IMG/VR virus record: IMGVR_UViG_3300025869_002060
Span: 1-64,000 of that record
Reading direction: 5' to 3' (one strand)
Length of the DNA stretch: 64,000 nucleotides
The translations under genes were made by a program, and so were the position numbers. This document shows positions 8,727 to 24,708 of this stretch, piece by piece. Positions within the stretch are counted from its first letter, which is position 1; each line of letters begins with the position of its first letter. The notes under the pieces were generated by a model, which was not told where the DNA came from, searched no databases, and was given only the letters and a program-made list of their open reading frames with translations.

Positions 8727-8802
<76 letters not shown>

Positions 8803-8811
8803 AAATAAGTC

Positions 8812-8840: not shown

Positions 8841-8870
8841 ACAAGCATACTAACAGAAAGAATAGAGAAC

Positions 8871-8936
8871 ATGATCAAAACTAACACAACATATATTATT
8901 TGTTGGCCACTGCAACAGGGGTATGTTTTGACGTGA
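8871..8936 (+). CDS. putative attenuator leader peptide (21 aa, MIKTNTTYIICWPLQQGYVLT)
   Basis: Short ORF between the promoter and a terminator; Thr/Ile-rich with a single TGG codon. Confidence 0.5.
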   Translation: MIKTNTTYIICWPLQQGYVLT

Positions 8937-8958
8937 CTTTGTGATCAAAGTTATTAAT

Positions 8959-8992
8959 AAAAGCCCCTAGCATTAAGTTAGGGGCTTTTTTT
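8959..8992 (+). terminator. intrinsic terminator / attenuator hairpin abutting tRNA-Trp
   Basis: AAGCCCCTA-loop-TAGGGGCTT followed by a T-tract ending 1 nt before the tRNA. Confidence 0.8.
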
Positions 8993-9066
8993 GTGGGTGT
9001 AGTGTAATGGCAACACGGCTGATTCCAAACCAGCAAACGGGGGTTCGATTCCCTCCACCTATGCCA
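8993..9066 (+). tRNA. tRNA-Trp(CCA)
   Basis: Cloverleaf; anticodon loop TTCCAAA centred on CCA (A31-C39 mismatch); G73 discriminator; encoded CCA. Confidence 0.85.
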
Positions 9067-9068
9067 AT

Positions 9069-9167
9069 TTATCGAGCAAATTGTTGTTTACTGAGTAATG
9101 TATTGATAATGTTTTTACGGTGCTGTCTAATTAGTTTTAGATAGCAAAATAAATGAAATGTATTCAT
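9069..9167 (-). CDS. riboswitch-controlled small basic peptide (32 aa, MNTFHLFCYLKLIRQHRKNIINTLLSKQQFAR)
   Basis: AAGGAGG SD 7 nt upstream of ATG; lies directly downstream of the tandem aptamers. Confidence 0.7.
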   Translation of the reverse strand: MNTFHLFCYLKLIRQHRKNIINTLLSKQQFAR

Positions 9168-9196
9168 TTCTCACCCTCCTTGGTTAAAAGTTAGGT

Positions 9197-9245
9197 GCGT
9201 TCCTTCGGTTTCATTACCTACTTCCGTCTCTTGCGAGATGAACGA
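9197..9245 (-). ncRNA. glutamine riboswitch aptamer (glnA-type), proximal copy
   Basis: Reverse complement CGTTCA-TCTC GCAA GAGA-CGGAAGTA-GGT AATGAA ACC-GAAG-GAACGC: P1 CGUU/AACG, P2 with GNRA loop, GGAAGUA/GAAG junction, P3. Confidence 0.8.
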
Positions 9246-9252
9246 TGATAAT

Positions 9253-9299
9253 GCGTTCCTTCGGCTTAATTGCCTACTTCCGCCCATTTGGGTGAACGT
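9253..9299 (-). ncRNA. glutamine riboswitch aptamer (glnA-type), distal copy
   Basis: Reverse complement CGTTCA-CCC AAAT GGG-CGGAAGTA-GGC AATTAA GCC-GAAG-GAACGC; P2 and P3 covary relative to the proximal copy. Confidence 0.8.
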
Positions 9300-9330
9300 T
9301 GTTTAGCATACGTATTTACCATAATATTGG

Positions 9331-9359
9331 TTGACTTATTGCTAATTTAGTACTATAGT
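9331..9359 (+). promoter_or_regulatory. sigma70-like promoter
   Basis: TTGACT-N17-TATAGT, divergent from the riboswitch transcript. Confidence 0.65.
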
Positions 9360-9399
9360 ATGTATATAGTAAAAAGAGTTATGTGAAGGAGTTTTATGT

Positions 9400-9621
9400 T
9401 TGTTTGAAATGGATGCATTTTCACATGCCGTGATCGCTGTAGTTTGTTTATTTATAGCATGGTATGTTGGTAGAAATTGGGGCCGGAAAAGTTTAGCAGA
9501 AGCTGTCATTGAAACAACTCTAGATAACTTAGAACGCTCTGGGTACATATGTACCGAAACTGGTAGGAATGGTGAGAAAGAACTAATTCCTATCTCAGAA
9601 ATTTTAGCAAATAAGGAATAG
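9400..9621 (+). CDS. small membrane protein
   Basis: N-terminal TM helix; AGGAG SD upstream. Confidence 0.6.
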   Translation: MFEMDAFSHAVIAVVCLFIAWYVGRNWGRKSLAEAVIETTLDNLERSGYICTETGRNGEKELIPISEILANKE

Positions 9622-9752
9622 CAAAATGGTTACAGTTGTCACTATTTTTGGATATATTGTACTAGCTAATTTTGTTGCATCTGGCGTAATGATGGCCATT
9701 GGCAATTAATTTTAACGGTATTCTTAATAAGGTATATAAAGAGTATTAGAAT

Positions 9753-9856
9753 TCGGAAGGTGGTATTGCTTGGGTCGCTACTAGGCAAGAGAACAGGTTT
9801 GGTGATAGAACATCAGTCTTAAGTATCCATTGATGAAACAGTGGAACACCTTCCGG
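9753..9856 (+). ncRNA. candidate structured ncRNA (unassigned)
   Basis: Perfect 9-bp closing stem CGGAAGGTG/CACCTTCCG enclosing three hairpins; ends 8 nt before tRNA-Ala. Confidence 0.55.
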
Positions 9857-9864
9857 CAAAGTTT

Positions 9865-9940
9865 GGGGCCGTAGCTCAGTTGGGAGAGCGATGCCTTTGC
9901 AAGGCATAGGTCGTCGGTTCGATCCCGTCCGGCTCCACCA
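9865..9940 (+). tRNA. tRNA-Ala(TGC)
   Basis: GGGGCCG acceptor with G3:U70, loop TTTGCAA, encoded CCA. Confidence 0.95.
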
Positions 9941-9941
9941 T

Positions 9942-10015
9942 GCGGGTGTCGTATAATGGTATTACCTGAGATTTCCAATCTCATGACAGGAGTTCGATTC
10001 TCCTCACCCGCTCCA
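9942..10015 (+). tRNA. tRNA-Gly(TCC)
   Basis: GCGGGTG/CACCCGC, TGAGA-TTTCCAA-TCTCA, U73, encoded CCA. Confidence 0.95.
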
Positions 10016-10035
10016 ACCAATCCGTAACGGAATGT

Positions 10036-10112
10036 GCGCCTGTAGCTCAGCTGGATAGAGCATTTGACTACGAATCAAAAGGCCAGGAGTTCGAATCTCT
10101 TCAGGCGCACCA
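10036..10112 (+). tRNA. tRNA-Arg(ACG)
   Basis: GCGCCTG/CAGGCGC, TTTGA-CTACGAA-TCAAA, encoded CCA. Confidence 0.95.
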
Positions 10113-12213: not shown

Positions 12214-12381
12214 ATGTCAGTAAGTTGTCAAAATTGTGGACATGAGTCACATTGTGGCGTTCCACTATGGAAAGAGTTTCGAAGAGCATATGATCACGGT
12301 CCTGAAGGCCAAATTGAAGTATGTAAACAATGTCGTTGTGAGTATTGTAGTCAAATTACCAAAAGAAAAGAGGTTAAATGA
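12214..12381 (+). CDS. small Cys/His-rich (zinc-binding) protein, 55 aa
   Basis: Read manually: CQNCGHESHCG...CKQCRCEYC; AGGAG SD. Confidence 0.6.
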   Translation: MSVSCQNCGHESHCGVPLWKEFRRAYDHGPEGQIEVCKQCRCEYCSQITKRKEVK

Positions 12382-12653: not shown

Positions 12654-13268
12654 ATGTTAGCAAACCTATTAGACGGAGTCAACAGAGCTTTGGTTACTAA
12701 GTTGGTAATTTTACATACCTTAGTAATTGCTGTCTCAAACTACCTAGTAACAATTAGATTTGATTTATTTCCCGGGGCAGAATTGCCACTATTTGGATCA
12801 TTTCCACTCGCGGCCGCGGCGTTCACATTTCCGATCGTTGTTGTTGCAACTGATTTGACTGTACGGTTAATTGGTAAACAAGCAGGAAGAGCCGTTGTGG
12901 CTATGGCCATTATTCCAGCTATTGTGGCGTCGGTGCTAGTGCTATTAGCACTTGGTGACGAACACGCCTACAGAGTTGGACTTGCAAGTGGCACAGCCTA
13001 TGCAATTGGAACAATGCTTGATGTATATGTATTCCAACACATTCGTGAAAAGTATACCGAAATGTGGTGGGCGGCACCAGCAATTTCTACAGTTGTTGCC
13101 AATATCATCGACACCTATGCATTCTTCTATACAGCGTTCTATCCGGCACCTTGGGTACACGGCGTAGCGTTCAATAATACACTTACTAAAATTGTAGTAG
13201 GTCTTATTGTATTCTTACCAGCATACGGTATGTTATTATCGTATCTTAGGAATAGAGTTAAGTCTTAA
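12654..13268 (+). CDS. yhhQ: queuosine precursor transporter (YhhQ/Vut family)
   Basis: SNYLV, AFTFP...ATDL, G...D..VF, STVVANIIDT..F motifs; multi-TM; AAGGAG SD. Confidence 0.8.
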   Translation: MLANLLDGVNRALVTKLVILHTLVIAVSNYLVTIRFDLFPGAELPLFGSFPLAAAAFTFPIVVVATDLTVRLIGKQAGRAVVAMAIIPAIVASVLVLLALGDEHAYRVGLASGTAYAIGTMLDVYVFQHIREKYTEMWWAAPAISTVVANIIDTYAFFYTAFYPAPWVHGVAFNNTLTKIVVGLIVFLPAYGMLLSYLRNRVKS

Positions 13269-13339
13269 CCACAAGGACGAAACCACTAAACCTCACCTAA
13301 TATAAAAATATATTAGGCCCAATAAAACGGTTATTGGAC

Positions 13340-13369
13340 AAAAAAGCAGAAGGAGACTTCTGCTTTTTT
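13340..13369. terminator. bidirectional intrinsic terminator
   Basis: AAAAAAGCAGAAG-GAGA-CTTCTGCTTTTTT. Confidence 0.75.
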
Positions 13370-13423
13370 CTTGACTTTAAAAAATATCAATGTTATTGTA
13401 AATATAACATTAGAAGGAATAAT

Positions 13424-13735
13424 ATGACAGAAGAATATAAAAAACTAGATGAGAAGATCAAAGAGTTGAACAGTACACGAGTCTATAAAAAAATTACTCC
13501 CAAAGGAGATTTGAGCTGGTATATTAAATGGTCATCTTCGGTTGTGATCCTATTGGCTGTAATGTGTCGCAGTGTTCCGGACGTTCCAAAAATATTTGAT
13601 CTAGTATTGTCATTTCATGGCTGTGCCGGTTGGCTAGTTGTTGGAATGCTTTGGCATGATAGAGCATTGATTTGTTTAAACGGTGTTTTGCTTTTTGTAC
13701 TTGGAAGTGGAATATTAACCTATATAGCCAGGTAA
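13424..13735 (+). CDS. small membrane protein
   Basis: Start at ATG 13424; three hydrophobic segments, WYIKW and WHDRAL motifs. Confidence 0.65.
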   Translation: MTEEYKKLDEKIKELNSTRVYKKITPKGDLSWYIKWSSSVVILLAVMCRSVPDVPKIFDLVLSFHGCAGWLVVGMLWHDRALICLNGVLLFVLGSGILTYIAR

Positions 13736-13742: not shown

Positions 13743-14189
13743 ATGAAAGATAAATTTAAAAAACTTTATATTGACTGGGCAAGACGAGTTGCAGAACTTA
13801 GTCATGCCAAACGACTTCAAGTTGGCGCAGTGATTGTAAAAGATGATACTGTTATCAGTTACGGTTATAACGGTATGCCTAGTGGATGGAATAACGAATG
13901 CGAAGATTTAGTTTTCTTTAAAGATAAAAAACAGCTTACCCAGCCTCTATTAAAAACTAAACCAGAAGTGCTACATGCCGAATCAAATGCAATAGCAAAA
14001 TTAGCTAAATCAAATAATAGTGGGTTAGATGCTGATATCTTTATTACACACAGTCCTTGTGGTGAATGTGCTAAACTAATACTACAAGCCGGTATACGTA
14101 CTGTTTATTATGCTGAGAATTATCGTGATGATACAGGAATAAAATTTCTAAAGAAATCTAAAATCTCGGTTCAGCTACTCGATAAATAA
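13743..14189 (+). CDS. dCMP/deoxycytidylate deaminase
   Basis: HAE...PCxxC zinc motif, GYNG, VGAVIV. Confidence 0.9.
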   Translation: MKDKFKKLYIDWARRVAELSHAKRLQVGAVIVKDDTVISYGYNGMPSGWNNECEDLVFFKDKKQLTQPLLKTKPEVLHAESNAIAKLAKSNNSGLDADIFITHSPCGECAKLILQAGIRTVYYAENYRDDTGIKFLKKSKISVQLLDK

Positions 14190-14234: not shown

Positions 14235-15083
14235 ATGGGCGTTAAAACTCTAACCTTCCATAATAAGTTGTTAACACTGGTTTATAGTTGTCAAGTTATA
14301 GGCATTGCCGGACTGATATACTACTGGGATCCTATCTACTTGTTATGGACCGCACTTGGTAAACTACTTTTTTATAGCTTTGGCGTAGAAATTGGTTTAC
14401 ACCGTTATCTATCACATCGTAGTTTTTCCATGGCCAAATGGAAAGAAAGAATACTCTTGGTATTGAGTATGTTTGCTTGTTATGGAAGTACACTTGGATG
14501 GTGTGCTAATCATAGAGTTCATCATACCAATGCTGATAAAACAAAAGGTGATCCACACCCTAGTAAGCAATGGTTTAAAACATGGTTTTGGATTAATACA
14601 GAAAAGAATGTTACAATAAGTCCAACAGTAATTAAAGATCTACTCAAAGATCCATTCCATAAATGGATGAGAGAAAATTACTTTAGAGTAGTAGTTGGTA
14701 CAATAGTTCTAAGTGCATTGATATTTGGTCCAAAGTTTGCTATATACTTCTTTGTAGTTCCAGCGGCACTTGCCCAACTTAGCGGCGGATTAATAAATGT
14801 AATTTGTCATAAATGGGGATATCGCTCATATGAAACTACCGATCTAAGCAAGAATAATTTTCTAGTTAATGCATATGCATTGTTTGTGGGTGTTGGATTA
14901 CATAACAACCATCATAAATTTCCTTGGGAACATAAAACACTAACAAAAGGAAAACGCATTTGGCATGAAGTGGATTGGGGCGGATGGTTTATTGAAAAAT
15001 TCTTGTTAGAAAGTAATGGCACAGATTGGGGGAAACGCTCTGGGCCATCAACAAAACAAACAAGTAAAATGTTAATGGAGTAA
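14235..15083 (+). CDS. membrane fatty-acid desaturase (delta-9-like) #1
   Basis: Three His boxes: HRYLSH, HRVHH, HNNHH; TM segments. Confidence 0.9.
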   Translation: MGVKTLTFHNKLLTLVYSCQVIGIAGLIYYWDPIYLLWTALGKLLFYSFGVEIGLHRYLSHRSFSMAKWKERILLVLSMFACYGSTLGWCANHRVHHTNADKTKGDPHPSKQWFKTWFWINTEKNVTISPTVIKDLLKDPFHKWMRENYFRVVVGTIVLSALIFGPKFAIYFFVVPAALAQLSGGLINVICHKWGYRSYETTDLSKNNFLVNAYALFVGVGLHNNHHKFPWEHKTLTKGKRIWHEVDWGGWFIEKFLLESNGTDWGKRSGPSTKQTSKMLME

Positions 15084-15085
15084 GA

Positions 15086-15916
15086 ATGGAACAGATAAGC
15101 AGTAAGTGGTTAGCCAGCTATCTTGGAGGGATTACTGGTGTATTTGGTAGTTTTGTAGTTTTTTGTGCAGACTATCATCATTGGGATTGGTATTTAATAA
15201 GTTTTTTGTGGTGGGTTATTGCATGTAGATTGATTATGCAAACAGTTGGACTACACAAATATTGGGCACACAATAGTTTTGACACTGGACCAATCCGTGA
15301 ATGGATTTTAACATGGGGTTGTATACTATGTGGTACTGGTAGTCCATATAACTGGGCAGTGCATCACAGACATCACCATAAACACACTGACACAGACAAA
15401 GATATTCATAGTCCTAATACTAATACTTTTACACAGTCGTTTTTTATAACATGGATGTTTAAACCAGACAAATGGTGGAGAGATAAGAAAATTTCACTAA
15501 AGCATAAAGATTTGCTGTCTAACAAAAAGGTCATGCATATACACAAGTATTATCATCATTATTGGTTTGCATTGATAATTGCAACATTGATAATTGATTG
15601 GCGTATAACACTATTCTTTGTACTTCAACCAGTTGGTTTGAATATGCTGATGTCTGGAATAAACAACCATTTAAGTCATACAGATATAGTTCCAAAATCA
15701 TACAGGAATTATGAATCAAAAGATAATAGTCATAATTTACCAGGCTGGACCAATTTACTGTTATTAGGCGAAGGATATCATCATAATCATCATCACGCAC
15801 CATGGAAGTACGACAACGCAGACAAGCCAGGAGAGTGGGATTTAAGCGGCTGGGTTATTCGTACGTTCTTTGATATACACCGCGGTAAACTAGGAAGCGA
15901 TTACAAGAGGTATTAG
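15086..15916 (+). CDS. membrane fatty-acid desaturase #2
   Basis: HKYWAH, HHRHHH, GEGYHHNHH. Confidence 0.9.
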   Translation: MEQISSKWLASYLGGITGVFGSFVVFCADYHHWDWYLISFLWWVIACRLIMQTVGLHKYWAHNSFDTGPIREWILTWGCILCGTGSPYNWAVHHRHHHKHTDTDKDIHSPNTNTFTQSFFITWMFKPDKWWRDKKISLKHKDLLSNKKVMHIHKYYHHYWFALIIATLIIDWRITLFFVLQPVGLNMLMSGINNHLSHTDIVPKSYRNYESKDNSHNLPGWTNLLLLGEGYHHNHHHAPWKYDNADKPGEWDLSGWVIRTFFDIHRGKLGSDYKRY

Positions 15917-15917
15917 A

Positions 15918-16730
15918 ATGCAATGGAAGTTAACATATTTTACGGGCTACATTGGTGCAATACTAGGTTTAGTATACACTGTCCAGGCTGACATTTGGCC
16001 TTTGTATGTAGCTAGTATAATATATTGGCTTCTCTTTTGTAGACTTATTTGTCAACTAATAGGATTACATAAGTATTGGACACACAGAAGTTTTTCAACA
16101 GGTCCAATACGCCATTTTATACTAGCATTTGGAAGTATACTATGTGGCACTGGTAGTCCGTACACATGGGCAGTGCATCACAGACATCATCATAAACATG
16201 CTGATACAGAAAAAGATGTACACAGTCCAACACAGAATGGTTGGTTAAGCACAATACTAGGTTACTGGGTATTGAATCCAACAGAATGGTGGTATGACAA
16301 AGGAATACAAGTAACACATAGAGACCTAGTTAAAGACAAACAGGTAATGCATGTTCACAAACATTACTGGAAATACTGGTATGCCTTATTAGTTATTACA
16401 ACATTAATAGATTGGCGTATTGCTTTGCTATTTGTAATTCAACCAATTGGGCTAAGTTTATTTGTACATGGGTGCAATAATTTGTTTAGTCACACAACCA
16501 AGTTTCCAAAATCATATAGGAATTATGATTTACCTGACAACAGTAGAAATTTACCAATCTGGACAAACCTAATGTTACTAGGAGAAGGGTATCACAACAA
16601 TCACCATAACAAACCTTGGGCATATGATAATGCAGACAAGCCAGGAGAATGGGATTTCAGTGCATTGGTAATTAAGTATGTATTTGATATTCATCGCGGT
16701 AAACGTGGCTATGAATATAATAAAATTTAA
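15918..16730 (+). CDS. membrane fatty-acid desaturase #3
   Basis: HKYWTH, HHRHHH, GEGYHNNHH; close paralog of #2. Confidence 0.9.
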   Translation: MQWKLTYFTGYIGAILGLVYTVQADIWPLYVASIIYWLLFCRLICQLIGLHKYWTHRSFSTGPIRHFILAFGSILCGTGSPYTWAVHHRHHHKHADTEKDVHSPTQNGWLSTILGYWVLNPTEWWYDKGIQVTHRDLVKDKQVMHVHKHYWKYWYALLVITTLIDWRIALLFVIQPIGLSLFVHGCNNLFSHTTKFPKSYRNYDLPDNSRNLPIWTNLMLLGEGYHNNHHNKPWAYDNADKPGEWDFSALVIKYVFDIHRGKRGYEYNKI

Positions 16731-16742
16731 TAGGAGAATAAT

Positions 16743-17513
16743 ATGAATCCATATAATCAGACACTTTGGGTAGTATGGGGTAACCATCTACTAACAATTG
16801 GAGCAATACTATTCTTTTTTGAATGGTGGATGATTCCAGTTGCCTTTCTATCAGGGCATTTGTTTAGTGTGTTCAGTGAAATAGGAATTCACAGATATTT
16901 TACACACAAAGCATTTACAGTTGAGTCCAGATGGAAAGAGCAGTTAATGAAAGTGTTTGCTTTTTTAACAGGACAAGGAGCAATACTAAGTTGGGTGACA
17001 GTGCATAGGCATCATCATGTTTACGAAGACCAAGAAGGTGATCCTCATAGTCCTAAGATATTTCCATATTGGAAGATCTATTTAGGCTTGTTTCCAAAAA
17101 CCTACAAATCAAATTTGGTAATGGATTTAATCAGGCACAAAGATAGAAGATATTTTGTATTTGAAAACAAATACTATTGGTTGATGTGGACTGCTCTATG
17201 GTTAGGAAGTTTTGCAATTAGTCCATATCTATTCTTTGTAATTGTTAGTGGCAGTGCAATGTGGTATGCTTTTACTAGTGTAGTTAATATATTTTTACAT
17301 GATGAAGTAGTTGGCCATAAACCACACCAAGAACATGTAGCCACCAATAGTGGATGGTTGAACTGGTTAACTGGTGTTGGTTATCACAACAATCATCACA
17401 AGAATCCTAGAAGCTATACATACAACCTAGATGGAAAAGATCGAGACTGGATTGGTGCTATTATTAAATACGTTATAGCAGACAAAGTAGAAGTTGAACA
17501 ACAGAAAGCGTGA
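16743..17513 (+). CDS. membrane fatty-acid desaturase #4
   Basis: HRYFTH, HRHHH, GYHNNHH; AGGAGA SD. Confidence 0.9.
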   Translation: MNPYNQTLWVVWGNHLLTIGAILFFFEWWMIPVAFLSGHLFSVFSEIGIHRYFTHKAFTVESRWKEQLMKVFAFLTGQGAILSWVTVHRHHHVYEDQEGDPHSPKIFPYWKIYLGLFPKTYKSNLVMDLIRHKDRRYFVFENKYYWLMWTALWLGSFAISPYLFFVIVSGSAMWYAFTSVVNIFLHDEVVGHKPHQEHVATNSGWLNWLTGVGYHNNHHKNPRSYTYNLDGKDRDWIGAIIKYVIADKVEVEQQKA

Positions 17514-17520
17514 GTACAAT

Positions 17521-18375
17521 ATGAAAATAGATCCAGACAAGTTTAAGCCAAGTTGGACCGGGCATAAAATTAAAGCATTGATTGTTATGGCACACCTAGC
17601 ATTCATTGGCTATTGTTTTTCAGCAGAATTTAATTGGTTGTTTGTACTCATTGGTGGACCTTTGTTATGGTTCTTTATTTCTAAGATGGGCATGGAAGTT
17701 GGTTTTCATAGATTGTTTTGCCATAAATCATTTTCAACTACACAATGGAAAGCAAGAATGCTACTGATACTTGGTACAATTTCAAGTGTAGGTAGCAGTC
17801 TAACTTGGGTAGCTACACACCGAGTACATCATAAACATGCAGATCATTTAGGTGATCCACAAAACAGTCGTAGAGATAACTCATGGTGGAAAAATTGGTT
17901 AACACTTTGGGACGACAATTGGAAATCCGAGCCGCTTATTATTAAAGATTTAATGCGTGATAAATGGCATCGTTATATACACAAACACTATTTTAAATTG
18001 GTACTTGGTTATATCTCCACACTGGGCGTTATAAGCCTGGCAGTATCTAGTTGGTATCCTATTGTTGTATTGTGGGCTTTTCCTGTTATACTAAATTTCA
18101 ATCTAGCAGGATTTTTAAATTCTCTATTTCATAACAACATAAATGGTTGGGGATTTTATAGAAATTATACTTCTGATGATGATAGCAGAAACCATGCAGT
18201 ACTAAATCTTCTTATGGCAGGTGCTGGAATGCACAACAATCATCATGGGGCTCCTGCTAGTTATACCTATAATACCAATAACAAATGGTATGAAATAGAC
18301 CCAACTGCAAAGTTTGTTAAGAAATTTTTAGCCACTGAAATTACACTACCAGACGGATCTAAAGAAAAAGTATAA
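17521..18375 (+). CDS. membrane fatty-acid desaturase #5
   Basis: HRLFCH, HRVHH, GMHNNHH; start at ATG 17521. Confidence 0.9.
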   Translation: MKIDPDKFKPSWTGHKIKALIVMAHLAFIGYCFSAEFNWLFVLIGGPLLWFFISKMGMEVGFHRLFCHKSFSTTQWKARMLLILGTISSVGSSLTWVATHRVHHKHADHLGDPQNSRRDNSWWKNWLTLWDDNWKSEPLIIKDLMRDKWHRYIHKHYFKLVLGYISTLGVISLAVSSWYPIVVLWAFPVILNFNLAGFLNSLFHNNINGWGFYRNYTSDDDSRNHAVLNLLMAGAGMHNNHHGAPASYTYNTNNKWYEIDPTAKFVKKFLATEITLPDGSKEKV

Positions 18376-18422: not shown

Positions 18423-19121
18423 ATGACTGGTACATATAGAGCTGAACTAATACCCACGGCAGAAGTTCGCTCAAACAAAAACCTACAAAAAAAATTACTT
18501 TCTATTATTACAGGCCGCAATCGGTTAATGGGTGCGTCGGTCACTGATAACTCTCATGCTGTCAGAGAGTTTGCAGGACTATTGGTCGAAAAGACAAAGC
18601 AAGGTTTTGATTCTAGATTTCATACATGGGCATTAGCATATCACAATGATGAAACTGATCCATGTGGATTCTTTGTATGTGGTAGTATTCATGATTTACC
18701 AATTTGGACAATACAAAGTGTGAGTTTTGCCAATGCACAAAAAAGAAATGATTGGTCAAAAGGACATCCTTTTGTAACAACTCTTGATGCACTTGGTGAC
18801 AAGATGATCTCTGACAGAGTATATGATTTATTGTGGATGAATCCTGATCGTCCAGCAATACGTAAACAATGGAAAAGTGGTTTTGACATGATGCGTTACT
18901 GTCCAAGTTTTTACGATTCAGAAAAACAGCAATATAAATGGCATAGGTATATTGAAGGAGTAGTCAAACAAGGCGAAACTCATCCTATTGAACAGTACCA
19001 TAAACAAATACTACAAGATAGACCAGCACTGGTTGATGTTGCAATTAGACATTTTGTTTTAAAAAATGAATACAGACAAGAATGGAATGCAGTGTCCGAC
19101 TGGTGGCCCAATAATGACTAA
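18423..19121 (+). CDS. hypothetical protein
   Basis: 232-aa soluble ORF between the desaturase array and the TRAP operon. Confidence 0.65.
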   Translation: MTGTYRAELIPTAEVRSNKNLQKKLLSIITGRNRLMGASVTDNSHAVREFAGLLVEKTKQGFDSRFHTWALAYHNDETDPCGFFVCGSIHDLPIWTIQSVSFANAQKRNDWSKGHPFVTTLDALGDKMISDRVYDLLWMNPDRPAIRKQWKSGFDMMRYCPSFYDSEKQQYKWHRYIEGVVKQGETHPIEQYHKQILQDRPALVDVAIRHFVLKNEYRQEWNAVSDWWPNND

Positions 19122-19569
19122 GTTAGTTAATTACTATAGCTGGTTTGTTCTAGCAATGGTATTACTAATTGTTACCAATGTATTAGGTCGTTACTTCTTT
19201 GATCTTAGATTTGATTTTGCAGTCGACGTGAGTTGGCAGTTGTATGGAATAATGATTATAATGGGTTGTAGTCATGCATTATCAACAGACTCGCATATAA
19301 GAACTGACGTATACTGGAACAAATTCAGTGATAAAGTTAAAGCTCGTATTGATTTTGTAAGTTATCTAATTTTATTTTTTCCTGCTATCAGTATACTCAC
19401 ATACAAAAGTATTTTTGATACTATAAGAAGTGTAGCACAAAACGAAACAAGCAGTGCAACAATGGCTCAACTCATAGTATGGCCATTGAAGATAGGAATT
19501 ACATTAGGATTAATATTATTACTGTATCAAGGTGCAGTAAACACAAGAAAGTGTTTTAAAAGATGTTAG
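19114..19569 (+). CDS. dctQ: TRAP transporter small permease
   Basis: Four TM helices; VLGRYFF, HIRTD motifs. Confidence 0.85.
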   Translation: MTKLVNYYSWFVLAMVLLIVTNVLGRYFFDLRFDFAVDVSWQLYGIMIIMGCSHALSTDSHIRTDVYWNKFSDKVKARIDFVSYLILFFPAISILTYKSIFDTIRSVAQNETSSATMAQLIVWPLKIGITLGLILLLYQGAVNTRKCFKRC

Positions 19570-20942
19570 CCATTGTAATGTTAGTGGCAATGATTGCCGG
19601 CATATTTGTAGGTGTTCCAGTAGCATTTACTCTCTTATTTTTAGCACTAGGTTTTGGCTACATCACAATGGGAGAAAATGTATTTGATTTAGCCTATTAT
19701 AATTTAATAGGTGGGCTTAGTGACGAAGTGTTCATGGCAATACCAATGTTTATATTCATGGGTTATGTTGCTGAACGGGCAGGTTTGGTAGAAGGATTGT
19801 TTGACAGTCTTAAACGTATGCTAAGTGGAATCAAAGGAAGTTTGTACTATGTTGTTATTGTAATTGCTATTCTTATCAGTCTGGCTACAGGTGTAGTTGG
19901 TGCCAGTGTGACCTTACTGGGTATTATGGCCGCGCCGCACATGATGCGGTTGGGTTACGATCACAAATTAAGTGCTGGTGTAATTGCCGCCGGAGGATCA
20001 ATGATTATTATTCCTCCAAGTGTTCCTTTAATTGTTATGGCACCAACAATGAATGTTAGTATTGTTGATCTATATGCGGCTGTAATGGGTCCAGGATTGA
20101 TGATTGCTTTTATGTTTATGGTTTATTGTGCCTATCAAGTTAGACGATATCCTGAACTAGCACCAGCAACAGAACATGAACCTGTTCCGTGGACCTTGTA
20201 TACTAGATTAATACTTGATGTTTTTCCATTGGCTTTCTTAATAGCAGTTACATTAGGCAGTATGTTATTTGGACTAGCAACCAGTACAGAAGCAGGATCA
20301 TTTGGAGCCGCAGGTGCTCTAATACTTGCTCTTGCCAATAGAAGTTTAACCTGGGAAAGATTGCAAGAGGCTATGTTAAAAACAACAAGCACAAGTGCCG
20401 TTGTTATGTTACTTGCTATAGCCTCAACTATTTTTGGTGCAGTTTTTACAGGATTGGGCGGGGACAATATTATTGTTGATGCTCTTAATAGTTTACCAAT
20501 ACCAACTTGGGCACTGGTAGGCACAATACTTGTATTGTGTCATATACTAGGCTGGCCGTTTGAATGGCCTGTAGTGGTACTGGTTTTTTTACCGATGTTT
20601 ATGCCCATCCTGGTAAATAACAACGTCGACATGTTGTGGTTTGGAGCCGCACTAGGGATAGTGATACAAACGGCCTACCTAACTCCTCCTGTTGCACTTA
20701 CATCATATTATTTAAAACAAGTTGTTCCTTCCTGGGATTTAACTATGATATTTAAATCTATGATGCCTTTTATGTGGATTCAAGTTTTAGCAGTCTGCAT
20801 ATTATTCCTAACCCCTAGTATCGCCACCTGGTTTCCAAAATATTTGGACCATCAGAGGCAGGTACTAAATAATTCTGTTACAGGAGAGAAACCTGTAGGA
20901 GAAATAGATTTCTTATCAAAGAGCAAGTCAAAATCAAATTAA
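19563..20942 (+). CDS. dctM: TRAP transporter large permease
   Basis: AIPMFIFMG, IIPPS(V)PLIV, YLTPPV motifs; about 12 TM. Confidence 0.92.
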   Translation: MLAIVMLVAMIAGIFVGVPVAFTLLFLALGFGYITMGENVFDLAYYNLIGGLSDEVFMAIPMFIFMGYVAERAGLVEGLFDSLKRMLSGIKGSLYYVVIVIAILISLATGVVGASVTLLGIMAAPHMMRLGYDHKLSAGVIAAGGSMIIIPPSVPLIVMAPTMNVSIVDLYAAVMGPGLMIAFMFMVYCAYQVRRYPELAPATEHEPVPWTLYTRLILDVFPLAFLIAVTLGSMLFGLATSTEAGSFGAAGALILALANRSLTWERLQEAMLKTTSTSAVVMLLAIASTIFGAVFTGLGGDNIIVDALNSLPIPTWALVGTILVLCHILGWPFEWPVVVLVFLPMFMPILVNNNVDMLWFGAALGIVIQTAYLTPPVALTSYYLKQVVPSWDLTMIFKSMMPFMWIQVLAVCILFLTPSIATWFPKYLDHQRQVLNNSVTGEKPVGEIDFLSKSKSKSN

Positions 20943-20956
20943 AGGAGATATTTTGG

Positions 20957-22048
20957 ATGAAAAAGACTTTAGTAGGAAGTATTGTAGCTGGTGCATTAGC
21001 TTTGTTTTCAACAGGCGTACTAGCAGATGATACAAAAACTTTAAAAATTGCAAGTTCCTACCCAGCAGTAAGCACACTTACTGATCAAGCAACTTTTATT
21101 GCAGATCGTGTTAAGACACTTACTGAAGGAAAGGTAATTATGGAATTTAAACCAGCTGGCGCATTAGTTCCAGCATTCCAAGTACTTGATGCAACAGCAT
21201 CTGGTGCGGCTGACGGAGCATGGACTCAGTCATATTACTGGGTTGGTAAAGATAAAACTTTATCGTTATTCAACTCACCCTTAGGTGGACCATACGGTAT
21301 GGACGGTATGGATTTCTTAGGCTGGATGTTCCACGGTGGCGGACTTGATCTATACAGAACTTTCTACAAGGATGTTTTAAAATTAGATGTTGTTCCTTTT
21401 CCAGTTATGCCAGCACAGAATCAGCCATTAGGTTGGTTTCATCGCCCAATTAAAGATCTAGCAGATCTAAAAAACTTTAAATGTCGTCAAACAGGTATTA
21501 ACGTAGAACTGTATGCTCGTATGGGTATGCAGACTATTGGTATGCCAGGTGGTGAGATTGCCGCCGCAGGGCGTAAAGGTGTTATTAATTGTGCAGAATT
21601 TGTTGGTGGTTTAGAAGATCAACGCATGGGCTTCAGCAAAATTTGGAAGTATTACTATCTAAACAGTTTGCATGAGCATTCAAACACAGGCGATTTACTA
21701 CTCAATGGTAAAGTATGGCGTAGCCTTTCAAAGCAACAGCAGACAGCAATTCGTTCTGCCGCTTATGAATCATATCTATGGTGGATGACTGACATGCAAG
21801 GTAAAAACGGTCAAGCACTAGCAGAAATGATTGAACAAGATGGAGTTAAAGTTATGAAAACTCCAGCAGATATCATTGAAGCAGAGTTAAAGACTATTGA
21901 TGCTATGTTAGCTGAAGAGAGTGCAAAGAACCCTTGGTTTGCTAAAGTACTTGCTTCACAAAAAGCATGGGCAAAGAAAGTTGTACCATTTAAGAACGTT
22001 GCGTTTACACCTTATAACTATGCCGCAGATTACTACTGGGGCAATTAA
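20957..22048 (+). CDS. dctP: TRAP substrate-binding protein (DctP/TakP-like)
   Basis: Signal peptide; PAGALVPAFQVLDA, YYWVGK, QPLGWF motifs; AAGGAG SD. Confidence 0.9.
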   Translation: MKKTLVGSIVAGALALFSTGVLADDTKTLKIASSYPAVSTLTDQATFIADRVKTLTEGKVIMEFKPAGALVPAFQVLDATASGAADGAWTQSYYWVGKDKTLSLFNSPLGGPYGMDGMDFLGWMFHGGGLDLYRTFYKDVLKLDVVPFPVMPAQNQPLGWFHRPIKDLADLKNFKCRQTGINVELYARMGMQTIGMPGGEIAAAGRKGVINCAEFVGGLEDQRMGFSKIWKYYYLNSLHEHSNTGDLLLNGKVWRSLSKQQQTAIRSAAYESYLWWMTDMQGKNGQALAEMIEQDGVKVMKTPADIIEAELKTIDAMLAEESAKNPWFAKVLASQKAWAKKVVPFKNVAFTPYNYAADYYWGN

Positions 22049-22261: not shown

Positions 22262-23443
22262 ATGTTCACATCTCTTCAGCACCCTGACCGATATGGTTAT
22301 TATCAAATTGGTAATCGACGTACTTACAGTAAACTAGAGTTCGTTGATTATCTTAATCAATATCCTGCAGACTGGCATTGGGATTACAACGATGCATTCT
22401 TTAGCAGTTTTGATTGGGCAACAGAACCCGCAGAAGATATCAACACACTATATCGTAAGCGAGCAGAAGCACTACGAGAACAATACGATTACGTTGTTCT
22501 CTTCTATTCGGGTGGATACGACAGTTCGAATATGCTATATGCATTTTTGGATAACGGAATTCCTATAGATGAAATCTGTACGTACTATGCAAGTCAGGAT
22601 ACATTCACAGGACAAAAAATAGAACTTGATAATTTTACCTGGCAGAAACTAGATGCCATTGAAAAGAAATATCCCAATATAAAGATCACACGTTGGGATT
22701 ACGGAGATGAATTTTTTAATTGGTCTGACAAAATTAAACAAGCAGGCGCCGGCGCTAACATGGTAGAAATGATAGCAGGAGGACTGATTTCTATTAACCG
22801 TATTGTATTAGATTTTGGTCATGAATATGTTCCACACTGGAAGAAGTTGCTCATGCAAGGCAAAAAGGTTGCATGGGTACACGGTGCAGATAAACCTATG
22901 TTGCGATATCACAACGATACGTGGAAATTTAACTTTCATGATGGAATAATCAATGGTCGATTAACTCCAGTACGGCAAATACTTGATCAAGGTGATATTG
23001 GAAATATTGAATTATTCTATTGGGCTCCCGATGCGACTTGTGCAAATATTATTATCAAACAATGTCATTTACTTAAAAATTATTACACCCCACAAGCAAA
23101 GATAGACTTTTCTAAAATACCAGGTGTTAAAAAGCATAATATTGAATATGGTTGGGAAATAGATAATATCTCACTTGACTTTGTTAAACAACTATATCCA
23201 AGACTATTCTCTGGTAACTTGATTTTACCAAATGAAAATTGGTCAACGATTAAAAGTGCCCGCAGTATGTTTGGCAACAGAGATCATTGGTTCACACAAT
23301 TAAACCATCATGCAGTAGATGAGTTTCATCGAATGTGGAAAGGAGCAAATAGCTCAATACATTCTCATTGGCATGATTGGTTCCACAACGGCACTATCGA
23401 AAGCGGTATTCGTAGTTGCATTACACAAGATTATATTATATGA
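22262..23443 (+). CDS. PP-loop (N-type ATP pyrophosphatase superfamily) protein
   Basis: VLFYSGGYDS motif (SGGxDS). Confidence 0.6.
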   Translation: MFTSLQHPDRYGYYQIGNRRTYSKLEFVDYLNQYPADWHWDYNDAFFSSFDWATEPAEDINTLYRKRAEALREQYDYVVLFYSGGYDSSNMLYAFLDNGIPIDEICTYYASQDTFTGQKIELDNFTWQKLDAIEKKYPNIKITRWDYGDEFFNWSDKIKQAGAGANMVEMIAGGLISINRIVLDFGHEYVPHWKKLLMQGKKVAWVHGADKPMLRYHNDTWKFNFHDGIINGRLTPVRQILDQGDIGNIELFYWAPDATCANIIIKQCHLLKNYYTPQAKIDFSKIPGVKKHNIEYGWEIDNISLDFVKQLYPRLFSGNLILPNENWSTIKSARSMFGNRDHWFTQLNHHAVDEFHRMWKGANSSIHSHWHDWFHNGTIESGIRSCITQDYII

Positions 23444-24708
23444 TTGAAGTTGTAATTGCATTAGCGGCCGGAATATGTGCAGGTGTGTTTGCTGGGTTAA
23501 TACCCGGTGTTCCAATTATGATGGGCTTTATGCTTTTCTTGCCAATGGTCAGTGCTGATGCATTTTGTTTAAGTTTGTATGGAGTGGTAATGACTCTTGG
23601 TACACAGTTCTTTGGTAGCCAAGCAGTATTGTATTATCGTATTCCTGGGGAAACCAGCAGTTTCCCCACATTAATTGAAAGCAAAAACTTTACAACACCT
23701 GAACAACTACGTCATACTATACAAGTGACAACCTGGGGCAGTCTTGTTGCAACTATAATTGCATTGTTGCTATTATCGTTGGCTCTTACAAGTGGTGCAT
23801 TAGATTGGGTCAAGCTCAGCATTGAATTTAGAGGTCTTGTGTTTGCATTGCTTATTGGTATGTGTATATTTGGTAATGGTCATGCATTGGCAAATATTGT
23901 TATTCTTGGTCTAGCAAGTTTCTTTGCATTCTACGAAGACATTGCTCCGCTAACAGGATTTATGCCTACCTACTACTTTAGCAGTATGTTGTCTCTTATT
24001 ATTATCTTCGCAATGCAGTTGGTATGGAATAGTTCTGACAGGTTTAAAACATACTCAGTTGGAACACATTCAACGTTTAAACTACGCGAGTGGTTGCCTT
24101 TTTATGCAAAATATGGATCTCTTGGAACCGTGTTTGGACTGGTACCACAACTAGGTGCTACCTTTAGCAGTTATCTTACTTACTCGTGGTTAAAGAAGAA
24201 TAATGCCAGTCCGACACACAGAGTTGCCGGAGCAGAAACAGCGAATAACGGAGCAATAGTATTTCAATGGTTTCCGTTGTTTTTGTTTGGTATTCCAATT
24301 ACAGGCAGTGAGATAATGCTAGTATCTCATTTTAATCAATTAGGACTTGATTTTAGTTTTCTTAAAGACTGGACTCAAGTTGCATGGCTTGCAGGATTGA
24401 TCGCACTAGCAGGATTAATCTACACTAGAATTTGCTTAACGACGAATCAATTACTTTATAAAGTGGTTGGAAGAGCATTGAGCTCACGTTACCTCACAAT
24501 CGCTATTGCGTTTGGAAGCATGTACTTATTTTATTGGGTTGGTAATTACACTGCTAAGTTTATGTTAATCCATTTAATGATTTTCATTCCGGTCAGTTGG
24601 ATAGTAGCTAAATTAAAAGTAAACCTATTAGCAGTTACTATTGGAATGATATTGATGAGTGAGATACTTCTTACTTTTTATCAACTGTTACAAATTCACA
24701 TTCTATAA
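23440..24708 (+). CDS. tripartite tricarboxylate transporter TctA-like permease
   Basis: G..AGLIPG, IPGETSS, VAGAETANNGA, GIP motifs; multi-TM. Confidence 0.75.
   Translation: MIEVVIALAAGICAGVFAGLIPGVPIMMGFMLFLPMVSADAFCLSLYGVVMTLGTQFFGSQAVLYYRIPGETSSFPTLIESKNFTTPEQLRHTIQVTTWGSLVATIIALLLLSLALTSGALDWVKLSIEFRGLVFALLIGMCIFGNGHALANIVILGLASFFAFYEDIAPLTGFMPTYYFSSMLSLIIIFAMQLVWNSSDRFKTYSVGTHSTFKLREWLPFYAKYGSLGTVFGLVPQLGATFSSYLTYSWLKKNNASPTHRVAGAETANNGAIVFQWFPLFLFGIPITGSEIMLVSHFNQLGLDFSFLKDWTQVAWLAGLIALAGLIYTRICLTTNQLLYKVVGRALSSRYLTIAIAFGSMYLFYWVGNYTAKFMLIHLMIFIPVSWIVAKLKVNLLAVTIGMILMSEILLTFYQLLQIHIL

What the first reader, a model, noticed from the sequence alone, without database searches (positions are those of the whole stretch)
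14235..18375. Array of five intact tandem membrane fatty-acid desaturases
Seen: five consecutive ORFs of 256-284 aa, 1-12 nt apart, each with all three His boxes. #2 and #3 share long near-identical blocks (CGTGSPYxWAVHHRHHHKHxDTxKDxHSP; YDNADKPGEWDxS), suggesting recent duplication, while #1, #4 and #5 are divergent. Known: single desaturases occur in some cyanophages and act on membrane fluidity. To my knowledge a five-gene paralog array in a phage is not described. Inference: the paralogs diversified in chain length, regiochemistry or headgroup, or in related chemistry (hydroxylase, acetylenase), forming a lipid-remodelling system or a signal-lipid pathway.
Basis: partly seen in the sequence, partly recalled or inferred. 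Interest (0 to 1): 0.82.

Follow-up and report, generated by a model that had tools for sequence, protein, structure and literature searches.

The report
Five-desaturase operon in a jumbo phage
A 228-kb marine jumbo phage carries five intact, anciently diverged membrane fatty-acid desaturase genes in a row next to a GNAT-fold acyltransferase-like gene; similar five-copy phages have been reported, but what multi-copy arrays do is still unknown.

Summary
Five tandem + strand ORFs (14235-18375; 282/276/270/256/284 aa; gaps of 2, 1, 12 and 7 nt) all pass Pfam FA_desaturase. All keep H-X4-H, H-R-X-H-H, N-X3-H and H-N/H-N-H-H. The one paralog modelled (paralog 5) has the SCD1 fold.

The array is not an assembly artefact. 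Three independent assemblies carry the same array in the same context, and each gene is under purifying selection (dN/dS 0.03-0.31). The paralogs are old: 26-37% identical, and 56.5% for #2/#3, which is not a recent duplicate. Related phages have 1:1 orthologs.

The window is the start of a 228-kb viral contig. Its replication proteins are about 50% identical to those of PA5oct-like jumbo myophages.

The novelty claim fails. Zhong et al. (2020, 2023) described two 222-230 kb cryopeg-brine phages with five FAD copies each, transcribed at low level.

The following is new as far as I could find:
- Arrays of 2-11 copies occur in 46 of 78 other IMG/VR loci, against 1 of 80 cellular loci.
- A GNAT-fold partner family recurs beside the arrays.
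- High-copy islands also hold KAS, radical-SAM, cupin and Rieske genes.

Most likely these are non-redundant SCD-type acyl desaturases that remodel host lipids. Substrates, regiochemistry and electron donor are unknown.

The parts
14235..15083 (+). Desaturase paralog 1 (282 aa), SCD/DesC-type membrane di-iron desaturase
   Evidence: PF00487 51 bits. Motifs HRYLSH, HRVHH, NVICH, HNNHH. Orthologs in L082, L002, L004, L005 with 99-100 support. dN/dS 0.057 vs L081 and 0.091 vs L082.
15086..15916 (+). Desaturase paralog 2 (276 aa); sister lineage of paralog 3 and the least constrained copy
   Evidence: PF00487 51.2 bits. Motifs HKYWAH, HRHHH, NHLSH, HHNHH. Ortholog L082_2473, support 96. dN/dS 0.307 vs L081 and 0.148 vs L082.
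15918..16730 (+). Desaturase paralog 3 (270 aa)
   Evidence: PF00487 62.2 bits. Motifs HKYWTH, HRHHH, NLFSH, HNNHH. 56.5% identical to paralog 2. The window and L082 copies of paralogs 2 and 3 form one four-member clade (100); within it only the paralog-2 pair is resolved (96), and L082_3304 is the nearest row (82% identity). dN/dS 0.081 and 0.052.
16743..17513 (+). Desaturase paralog 4 (256 aa), the most divergent lineage (long stem branch)
   Evidence: PF00487 63.2 bits. Motifs HRYFTH, HRHHH, NIFLH, HNNHH. Orthologs L082_4126, L002_10786, L004_10137, support 100. dN/dS 0.027 and 0.047.
17521..18375 (+). Desaturase paralog 5 (284 aa from ATG 17521; an alternative TTG start lies at 17494)
   Evidence: PF00487 66 bits. 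Motifs HRLFCH, HRVHH, NSLFH, HNNHH. AlphaFold2 model pLDDT 92.8. The only confident PDB fold matches are SCD1 entries 6wf2/4ymk/4zyo, TM 0.67. Orthologs L082_4887 and L002_11595. dN/dS 0.041 and 0.120.
18423..19121 (+). GNAT-fold protein (232 aa), a conserved partner 47 nt downstream of the array
   Evidence: No Pfam or PHROG hit. AlphaFold2 pLDDT 88.7. Foldseek against PDB gives 279 hits at E<=1e-3; all 50 listed are GNAT acyl/acetyltransferases. The family is small: 10 representatives among 1.84 billion proteins. Members 37% and 27% identical also sit beside desaturase arrays (L163/L164, L166). A family profile finds roughly 200-aa members in many other desaturase islands.
19066..22048 (+). 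Complete TRAP transporter DctQ (19066-19569), DctM (19563-20942) and DctP (20957-22048), directly downstream. Synteny is conserved in the near-identical assembly L080; no functional link to the desaturases is shown
   Evidence: Pfam DctQ, DctM and DctP. Same order in L080.
13743..14189 (+). dCMP deaminase directly upstream of the array. Synteny is conserved; this is context, not part of the lipid function
   Evidence: PF00383. Same position in L081 and L082 and in L002-L004.

Best explanation
The five genes form a co-oriented, tightly packed block that is probably co-transcribed. They are auxiliary metabolic genes of a PA5oct-like jumbo myophage. Each encodes a short (256-284 aa) integral-membrane di-iron enzyme of the SCD/OLE1/DesC 'first desaturase' type.

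Shown:
- Family and fold membership.
- A complete set of metal ligands in all five.
- Purifying selection on each copy.
- Conservation of the array in independent assemblies.
- 1:1 orthology of the paralogs with copies in related phages.

Inferred:
- During infection the enzymes insert into the host inner membrane. Using O2 and a host-supplied electron donor (none is encoded in the 64 kb seen), they introduce double bonds into host acyl chains, either phospholipid-bound or acyl-CoA.
- The paralogs are old and individually constrained, so they are non-redundant. They probably differ in double-bond position, chain length or lipid carrier, so that together they shift the host's acyl-chain profile more broadly than one enzyme could.
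- The GNAT-fold protein encoded immediately downstream, which recurs beside such arrays in diverged phages, probably acts with them. It could be an acyltransferase that supplies or uses the modified acyl chains.
- The physiological payoff is most likely control of membrane fluidity or composition during infection in cold or saline water.
For: Family:
- PF00487 above the cutoff for all five.
- A profile of the five hits SCD1 at E about 5e-25, against AlkB at 6e-7.
- All SCD1-type ligand motifs are invariant.
- The AF2 model (pLDDT 92.8) matches only SCD1 structures, TM 0.67.

Reality of the array:
- The same five-gene array in the same context occurs in ENA assemblies L080 and L081 (about 98% nt) and in JGI contig L082 (69-84% nt).

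Constraint:
- dN/dS is 0.03-0.31 against L081 and 0.05-0.15 against L082.

Age and non-redundancy:
- Identities are 26-57%.
- Paralogs 1, 4 and 5 have orthologs in the same order in L002, and 1 and 4 in L004. The 2/3 duplication predates the window/L082 split.

Generality:
- 46 of 78 other IMG/VR loci have at least 2 copies, up to 11.
- 163 of 171 viral copies keep all three His boxes.
- Only 1 of 80 cellular loci has more than one copy.

Partner: GNAT fold and recurrent adjacency.

Phage identity: helicases, tail fibre, RNR and tRNAs, and PA5oct/Atu_ph07/Phosso at about 50% identity.

Precedent:
- Cyanophage vFADs are active delta-9 desaturases (PMC5776448).
- The five-copy cryopeg phages transcribe their FADs (PMC10405475).
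Against: - No activity, substrate or regiochemistry can be read from sequence.
- No ferredoxin, flavodoxin, cytochrome b5 or reductase was found in the 64 kb, so electron supply is assumed.
- The host is unknown. The TRAP relatives turned out to be phage genes.
- Sharing of subfamilies with distant phages is favoured by the ML tree but not significant. Holding the window group together costs 41.7 lnL, p-AU 0.074.
- Paralog 2 is under weaker constraint.
- The GNAT link rests on adjacency only, and no canonical acyl-CoA-binding motif is evident by eye in the alignment.
- Promoter and terminator scans are no better than shuffles, so co-transcription is inferred from spacing only.
- Zhong 2023 saw only low transcription of the FAD genes in a related setting.
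Confidence: 0.6

Rival explanations
1. Specialised-metabolite pathway. The desaturases, together with the GNAT-fold protein (and, in other phages, KAS, radical-SAM, cupin, Rieske and ATP-grasp enzymes), build or tailor a dedicated lipid or lipid-derived molecule rather than adjusting bulk membrane lipids. The product could be an N-acyl amine or aminolipid, a polyunsaturated or conjugated acyl chain, or a signal.
For: - A GNAT-fold partner family sits beside arrays in diverged phages, sometimes in several copies per island.
- High-copy islands L010, L013, L014, L015 and L009 interleave desaturases with beta-ketoacyl synthase, B12-radical SAM, radical SAM, cupin, Rieske and ATP-grasp genes.
- PF05118 (the LpxO/OlsC-type hydroxylase family) lies a median 90 nt from the nearest desaturase in 22 loci.
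- Transporters are adjacent in the window and in L009.
Against: - Near the array the window itself has only the desaturases and the GNAT protein. No KAS, ACP, thioesterase or PF05118 gene was seen among the ORFs annotated.
- Accessory-gene regions of large marine myophages collect unrelated genes. Pelagimyophages are already known to carry fabF, SCD, Asp/Asn hydroxylase, radical SAM and transport genes (PMC7029224).
- The co-occurrence was not tested against a background.
Confidence: 0.2
2. Redundant copies for gene dosage. The five enzymes do the same delta-9 reaction, and the copy number simply raises activity.
For: Zhong et al. 2020 proposed elevated dosage as an advantage. All five share the same SCD-type catalytic motifs.
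Against: - Paralogs are only 26-57% identical with saturated dS.
- Each has its own conserved ortholog in related phages.
- Dosage amplifications are normally young and near-identical, and there is no nucleotide-level similarity between copies.
Confidence: 0.08
3. Some or all copies do non-desaturase chemistry within the same fold, such as hydroxylation, acetylenation, conjugation or epoxidation, or they act on non-fatty-acid substrates.
For: From general knowledge, the membrane di-iron His-box superfamily includes hydroxylases, ketolases and alkane monooxygenases. A weaker profile hit to AlkB was found. The stem of paralog 4 is very long.
Against: - The motifs match the SCD/DesC signature (HRxxxH, HRxHH...D...DPH, G.G.HNNHH) rather than AlkB or CrtW types.
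- The PDB profile hit to SCD1 is about 18 orders of magnitude better than to AlkB.
- The only NCBIfam hit is a desaturase family.
Confidence: 0.1
4. Assembly artefact or decaying pseudogene cluster.
For: None found.
Against: - Three independent assemblies from other samples carry the same order.
- The ORFs are intact and all ligands are present.
- dN/dS is well below 1.
Confidence: 0.01

Closest known systems
Five-copy FAD jumbo phages from Arctic cryopeg brine (Zhong et al. 2020, PMC7300359; 2023, PMC10405475; vOTU43_CB18_222366 and vOTU105_CB18_230153)
   Same: - Uncultivated phages of 222-230 kb (this contig is 228 kb).
- Five FAD copies per genome, with three His motifs.
- SCD1 (4ZYO) is the best structural template.
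- Purifying selection on the FAD genes.
- FAD clades without close microbial relatives.
- Predicted Pseudomonas host there; here the nearest cultured phages are PA5oct-like Pseudomonas jumbo phages.
   Different: - The sequences could not be compared here, so kinship is not shown.
- This phage occurs in other, apparently marine, samples.
- In the parts I read, those papers do not describe the tandem order, ortholog sets across phages, the GNAT-fold partner or larger arrays.
Cyanophage vFAD-I and vFAD-II (Roitman et al. 2018, PMC5776448)
   Same: Phage-borne DesC/SCD-type membrane desaturases with three His boxes, treated as auxiliary metabolic genes. The cyanophage enzymes were shown experimentally to be delta-9 desaturases acting on C16.
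   Different: - One FAD gene is described per cyanomyophage contig.
- They are close to the host picocyanobacterial DesC clades, and a phage ferredoxin is present on the contig.
- The window's genes have no close cellular relative (best 38%).
- tblastn against deposited phage genomes found no cyanophage hit.
Stearoyl-CoA desaturase SCD1 (PDB 4YMK, 4ZYO, 6WF2) and the OLE1/DesC family
   Same: Fold (TM 0.67), His boxes plus N-X3-H ligands, and paired transmembrane hairpins.
   Different: - 22-24% identity over the structural alignment.
- 256-284 aa, against 298-322 residues in the crystallised SCD1 chains.
- The acyl carrier is unknown (CoA or glycerolipid).
- No cytochrome b5 or reductase partner was found.
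Pseudomonas-type DesA family (NCBIfam NF049918)
   Same: It is the only NCBIfam model hit by all five.
   Different: Scores are 32-65 bits against a cutoff of 400, and the model is 385 positions long. These are not members of that equivalog.
Single FAD genes in deposited phages: Pelagibacter phage Mosig and Acinetobacter phage MD-2021a (254 kb)
   Same: Same family at 26-32% identity, in large myophage or jumbo genomes.
   Different: One copy per genome and no array.
Paralog radiations of SCD-type desaturases in insect pheromone glands (from general knowledge, not tested here)
   Same: An expansion of 'first desaturase' paralogs in which copies differ in position, chain length and stereochemistry. 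This is the kind of diversification proposed here.
   Different: Eukaryotic and cytochrome b5-dependent, dispersed or clustered in animal genomes. This is an analogy only.

Membership tests
Membrane-bound di-iron fatty acyl desaturases, SCD/OLE1/DesC 'first desaturase' type (PF00487) | Pfam FA_desaturase match above the gathering score | tested here: met
   All five score 51-66 bits against 29.7.
Membrane-bound di-iron fatty acyl desaturases, SCD/OLE1/DesC 'first desaturase' type (PF00487) | Three His boxes: H-X4-H, H-X2-H-H, H-X2-H-H | tested here: met
   Present and aligned in all five.
Membrane-bound di-iron fatty acyl desaturases, SCD/OLE1/DesC 'first desaturase' type (PF00487) | Additional SCD1-type ligands Asn-X3-His in the fourth transmembrane helix | tested here: met
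   N188 and H192 (paralog 1 numbering) are invariant and align to VNSAAH of SCD1.
Membrane-bound di-iron fatty acyl desaturases, SCD/OLE1/DesC 'first desaturase' type (PF00487) | SCD1-like fold: four transmembrane helices plus a cytosolic cap | tested here: met
   Paralog 5 model has pLDDT 92.8. Foldseek gives only SCD1 entries, probability 1.00, TM 0.67. For the other four only hydropathy and alignment were used.
Membrane-bound di-iron fatty acyl desaturases, SCD/OLE1/DesC 'first desaturase' type (PF00487) | O2-dependent desaturase activity with a defined regiospecificity | not testable with these tools
   Needs expression and GC-MS.
Membrane-bound di-iron fatty acyl desaturases, SCD/OLE1/DesC 'first desaturase' type (PF00487) | A cognate electron donor (ferredoxin, flavodoxin, cytochrome b5 or a reductase) | tested here: inconclusive
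   None was found in the 64-kb window. Relative L004 has a 2x[4Fe-4S] ferredoxin about 6 kb from its array. The other 164 kb of the contig were not seen, and a host donor is possible.
Pseudomonas DesA family equivalog (NCBIfam NF049918) | Score at or above the curated cutoff of 400 bits over the 385-position model | tested here: not met
   31.8-65.4 bits.
Cyanophage vFAD-I/II (Roitman 2018) | Clustering with picocyanobacterial DesC delta-9-3 or delta-9-4 clades, on a cyanomyophage backbone | tested here: not met
   No cyanophage hit in 50,697 phage records at E<=0.01. The closest cellular relatives are Bdellovibrionota, Bradyrhizobium, Verrucomicrobiota and Bacteroidota at 26-38%. The backbone is PA5oct-like. 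The vFAD sequences themselves were not available for a direct tree.
Five-copy FAD jumbo phages of Zhong et al. 2020/2023 | Genome of about 220-230 kb with five FAD copies | tested here: met
   The contig is 228,348 bp and has five copies in the first 64 kb. Compared with the text.
Five-copy FAD jumbo phages of Zhong et al. 2020/2023 | Sequence kinship (same viral genus) with vOTU43_CB18_222366 or vOTU105_CB18_230153 | not testable with these tools
   Those sequences were not retrievable by name in the collections at hand.
GNAT acyl-CoA N-acyltransferase superfamily (for the 232-aa neighbour) | GNAT fold | tested here: met
   AF2 pLDDT 88.7. 279 PDB matches at E<=1e-3; all 50 listed are GNAT enzymes, TM by target 0.5-0.7.
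GNAT acyl-CoA N-acyltransferase superfamily (for the 232-aa neighbour) | Sequence-profile match and a canonical acyl-CoA-binding motif | tested here: not met
   No Pfam hit at E<=0.01. No R/Q-x-x-G-x-G/A motif is evident by eye in the alignment. A distant island member gives only Acetyltransf_1 at E 0.007.

The most novel reading that the evidence does not exclude
Multi-subfamily arrays of SCD-type desaturases, together with a dedicated GNAT-fold partner (and KAS, radical-SAM and oxygenase genes in the larger islands), form a virus-specific lipid-diversification module. In this reading the paralogs act at different positions, or sequentially, to give the infected cell polyunsaturated or otherwise unusual acyl chains or N-acyl lipids that the host cannot make. 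That would be a new class of phage-driven lipid biosynthesis, not simple tuning of membrane fluidity.
Probability: 0.2. Interest if true: 0.75.

Novelty: new member of a known kind. Interest (0 to 1): 0.45.

Why it matters
Phage desaturases are usually treated as single fluidity genes. This window and the survey around it point to something different. Large aquatic phages often keep whole sets of old, individually constrained desaturase paralogs, up to 11 within 18 kb, whereas cellular genomes almost never do. A previously unannotated GNAT-fold protein travels with these sets.

If the paralogs differ in specificity, phages would be reshaping host lipid composition far more specifically than is assumed. 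The arrays would also be a natural library of compact (about 260 aa) membrane desaturases with varied specificities. For this locus, the five-copy arrangement has already been published for similar jumbo phages, so the locus itself is a confirmation and an extension, not a discovery.

Tried and rejected
- Misassembly: rejected, because three independent assemblies share the array.
- Recent duplication or gene conversion of #2/#3: rejected.
- Host inference from the TRAP permease: failed. The 68-72% identical relatives carry no taxon names, and the one cluster whose contigs I looked up (P0158, 72%) is encoded by T4-like phages.
- Nucleotide similarity to deposited phages: none.
- Phage-encoded electron donor: motif scans and tblastn with the L004 ferredoxin found nothing in the window.
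- Promoter and terminator scan: no excess over shuffles.
- The 393-aa conserved unknown (22262-23443) as a lipid enzyme: rejected. It has a PP-loop ATPase fold (QueC/Asn-synthase-like) with an SGGYDSS motif.
- Formal test that the subfamilies are shared with distant phages: inconclusive (p-AU 0.074).
- PHROGs: only weak hits to phrog_35201, a family of unknown function.
- Literature searches for 'jumbo phage' plus FAD, and for tandem viral desaturases: nothing beyond the Zhong papers.
- Mapping of SCD1 tunnel-end residues onto the paralogs: not attempted.

Full report
**Observation.** One search shows five consecutive + strand ORFs:
- 14235-15083 (282 aa)
- 15086-15916 (276 aa)
- 15918-16730 (270 aa)
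- 16743-17513 (256 aa)
- 17521-18375 (284 aa from the ATG; a TTG at 17494 would give 293 aa)

They are separated by 2, 1, 12 and 7 nt. All five match Pfam FA_desaturase at 51-66 bits against a cutoff of 29.7. The alignment and a motif scan show H-X4-H, H-R-X-H-H, N-X3-H and H-N/H-N-H-H in every copy.

**What kind of enzyme.**
- A profile of the five hits human and mouse SCD1 in the PDB at E about 5e-25, and the alkane hydroxylase AlkB only at 6e-7.
- In that alignment the invariant Asn and His of the N-X3-H motif align with VNSAAH of SCD1. The three boxes align with HRLWSH, HRAHH and HNYHH.
- An AlphaFold2 model of paralog 5, built on 54 sequences, has mean pLDDT 92.8. Its only confident PDB matches are SCD1 entries 6wf2, 4ymk and 4zyo (probability 1.00, TM 0.67).
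- In the viral structure library it matches an 'OLE1 fatty-acid desaturase' of an uncultured caudovirus and an Emiliania huxleyi virus desaturase fragment.
- The only NCBIfam hit is the Pseudomonas-type DesA family, at 32-65 bits against a cutoff of 400. The genes are therefore not members of that equivalog.

Conclusion: these are SCD/OLE1/DesC-type membrane di-iron desaturases. The acyl carrier and the double-bond position cannot be read from sequence.

**Is it a phage, and which kind.**
- The window equals bases 1-64000 of IMGVR_UViG_3300025869_002060, a contig of 228,348 bp.
- It encodes UvsW-like and DnaB-like helicases, a tail fibre with an S74 chaperone domain, an Mtd_N/pectate-lyase tail spike, class I RNR, primase and PRPP synthetase, and five tRNAs.
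- Nearly all long ORFs lie on one strand.
- The helicases are 48-54% identical to those of jumbo myophages PA5oct and its relatives (Pseudomonas), Atu_ph07 (Agrobacterium) and Phosso (Sinorhizobium).
- There is no nucleotide-level match in 50,697 deposited phage records.

**Not an artefact, not decaying.**
- Two ENA assemblies from other samples (L080, L081; about 98% nt) and one JGI contig (L082; 69-84% nt) carry the same context. The order is Vut_1, DUF6552, dCMP deaminase, five desaturases, the 232-aa gene, then DctQMP.
- Nei-Gojobori dN/dS for paralogs 1-5 is 0.057, 0.307, 0.081, 0.027 and 0.041 against L081. Against L082 it is 0.091, 0.148, 0.052, 0.047 and 0.120.
- All five are under purifying selection, and paralog 2 is the least constrained.

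**Age of the paralogs.**
- Pairwise identity is 26-37%, except for #2/#3 at 56.5%.
- The 'near-identical blocks' in #2/#3 are the His-box regions. Third-position identity there is 0.45-0.7, the longest exact nucleotide match is 23 nt, and dS is about 2. There is no recent duplication and no gene conversion.
- An IQ-TREE (LG+C20) tree of 89 sequences gives each paralog its own orthologs. Paralog 1 groups with copies in L082, L002, L004 and L005. Paralog 4 groups with copies in L082, L002 and L004. Paralog 5 groups with copies in L082 and L002.
- Paralogs 2 and 3 group with the two L082 copies in one four-member clade (100). Paralog 2 pairs with its L082 copy (96), and paralog 3 is nearest to the other (82% identity).
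- L002 holds the 1-4-5 orthologs in that order. The 2/3 pair is therefore an addition in the window/L082 lineage.
- In the ML tree the lineages are interleaved with copies from distant phages (L006, L007, L009, L010, L011, L015, L029, L054). Forcing the window group into one clade costs 41.7 lnL units but is not formally rejected (p-AU 0.074).

**How common are arrays.**
- A profile scan of the IMG/VR loci (loci not dereplicated, within 10 kb on each side only) found at least 2 desaturase ORFs in 46 of 78 other loci. The largest counts are 11 (L015), 9 (L026), 8 (L010, L014), 7 (L013) and 5 (L009, L051).
- 163 of 171 full-length viral copies keep all three His boxes.
- In GTDB representative genomes the best match is 38% identical, in a Pseudobdellovibrio MAG, and most are about 30%. 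79 of those 80 loci hold one copy within 8 kb.
- Among deposited phage genomes, only Pelagibacter phage Mosig and the 254-kb Acinetobacter phage MD-2021a have a homologue, one copy each.
- PHROGs offers only weak hits to a family of unknown function.

**Neighbours.**
- The 232-aa gene 47 nt downstream (18423-19121) has no Pfam or PHROG hit. It belongs to a small family with 10 representatives among 1.84 billion proteins.
- Its AlphaFold2 model (pLDDT 88.7) is a GNAT fold. It has 279 PDB matches at E<=1e-3, and all 50 listed are GNAT enzymes. The protein atlas had given the same lead.
- Family members 37% and 27% identical also lie beside desaturase arrays (L163/L164, L166).
- A family profile finds roughly 200-aa relatives in islands L010, L013, L014, L015, L016, L026, L044, L060 and others. 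This is the best candidate for a functional partner, but the link is by adjacency only.
- Across loci, other recurrent neighbours are PF05118 hydroxylase-domain proteins, beta-ketoacyl synthase and B12-binding radical SAM enzymes. The high-copy islands also hold a cupin, a Rieske protein, an ATP-grasp enzyme, radical SAM enzymes and a TctC receptor.
- Pelagimyophages are already reported to carry fabF, stearoyl-CoA desaturase, Asp/Asn hydroxylase, radical SAM and transport genes (PMC7029224). Part of this co-occurrence may therefore only reflect a shared accessory region.
- No ferredoxin, flavodoxin, cytochrome b5 or reductase was found in the window. Relative L004 has a 2x[4Fe-4S] ferredoxin about 6 kb from its array.

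**Literature.**
- Roitman et al. 2018 (PMC5776448) showed that single cyanophage vFADs are delta-9 desaturases acting on C16.
- Zhong et al. 2020 (PMC7300359) found 12 vFADs in four Arctic viral populations. All cryopeg vFADs belonged to two viruses with 'five copies each'. They had three His motifs, SCD1 as the template, purifying selection, and clades without microbial members.
- Zhong et al. 2023 (PMC10405475) extended those two viruses to 222,366 bp (complete) and 230,153 bp. They predicted Pseudomonas as host and saw low-level FAD transcription.
- The present 228-kb PA5oct-like contig fits that description closely. Sequence kinship could not be tested.
- Searches for other descriptions of tandem or multi-copy viral desaturases found nothing.

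**Interpretation.** The most likely reading (confidence 0.6) is an operon-like set of non-redundant SCD-type desaturases. A jumbo phage would use it, with host reducing power, to remodel host acyl chains, probably together with the GNAT-fold protein.

Rival readings:
- A dedicated lipid or metabolite pathway (0.2).
- Altered chemistry within the same fold (0.1).
- Plain gene dosage (0.08).
- Assembly artefact (0.01, refuted).

**Verdict.** For this locus the novelty is 'new member of a known kind'. The breadth of arrays in uncultivated phages, the conserved ortholog sets and the GNAT-fold partner are, as far as I could find, undescribed and worth an expression study.

Noticed in passing
window 19066-22048: A complete TRAP transporter (DctQ, DctM, DctP) is encoded by the phage directly after the array. 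Its DctM relatives at about 72% identity appear in 99 blocks of the collection. The two contigs examined are T4-like phages, with DctQMP next to gp13, neck, gp15 and terminase genes (L167, L168). Complete TRAP transporters therefore look like a widespread marine phage accessory module.
   Followed up: partly
window 23416-25550: A TctA permease (430 aa) is followed by a 276-aa protein with a weak TctC receptor match (below the Pfam cutoff). This would be parts of a second, tripartite tricarboxylate-type uptake system on the same phage. TctA or TctC also sits beside desaturase arrays in L002-L004, L163/L164 and L009.
   Followed up: partly
window 22262-23443: A 393-aa protein without a Pfam hit has a PP-loop motif (SGGYDSS). 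In the protein atlas it has a virus-only family with a QueC/asparagine-synthase-like fold. It recurs in high-copy desaturase islands (L008, L009, L010, L014). A Vut_1/YhhQ-type transporter lies at 12654-13268, which hints at 7-deazaguanine or a related nucleoside modification.
   Followed up: partly
window 40449-42768: A DUF3050 / haem-oxygenase-like di-iron protein (279 aa) lies directly upstream of a B12-binding radical SAM enzyme (492 aa). The radical SAM family recurs next to desaturases in eight other viral loci (L010, L014, L037, L041, L049, L056, L064, L079).
   Followed up: partly
window 12214-12381: A 55-aa Cys-rich ORF (CxxCG ... CxxCxCxxC) is conserved in L002 and L003. It is zinc-ribbon or rubredoxin-like by motif only, about 2 kb upstream of the array. 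It has no Pfam or PHROG hit.
   Followed up: partly
window 8727-10112: A cluster of five tRNA genes: Thr-TGT, Trp-CCA, Ala-TGC, Gly-TCC and Arg-ACG.
   Followed up: no
window 13340-13399: A 13-bp-stem hairpin with a T tract is followed at once by a promoter-like site (TTGACT-17-TATTGT with TG). It lies inside the TTG-started ORF 13334-13735. The DUF6552 gene therefore probably starts later (103-107 aa in L081 and L082), and a transcription unit containing the array may begin here.
   Followed up: no
L015 1878-17205; L026; L010; L014; L013: Viral loci hold 7-11 desaturase ORFs within about 18 kb, interleaved with beta-ketoacyl synthase, B12-radical SAM, radical SAM, cupin, Rieske, ATP-grasp and GNAT-like genes. 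Orthologous sets are shared among these phages.
   Followed up: partly
L036 6335-7312 and 21 other loci; L022 18953-19585: PF05118 (Asp/Asn beta-hydroxylase, the LpxO/OlsC-type domain) proteins lie a median 90 nt from the nearest viral desaturase in 22 loci, and a second cluster is found in 14 loci. No such gene was seen among the window ORFs annotated.
   Followed up: partly
L083 5610-7112: The only cellular locus with two adjacent desaturases is a Pseudobdellovibrio MAG contig. It is also the closest cellular match (38%), and its copies group with viral copies in the tree. This may be a prophage or a viral contig binned into the MAG.
   Followed up: no
L004 16677-16997: A 106-aa 2x[4Fe-4S] ferredoxin lies about 6 kb downstream of the desaturase pair in a relative of the window phage. 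No ortholog exists in the window's 64 kb.
   Followed up: yes
window 38008-38967: A phage-encoded ribose-phosphate pyrophosphokinase (PRPP synthetase).
   Followed up: no
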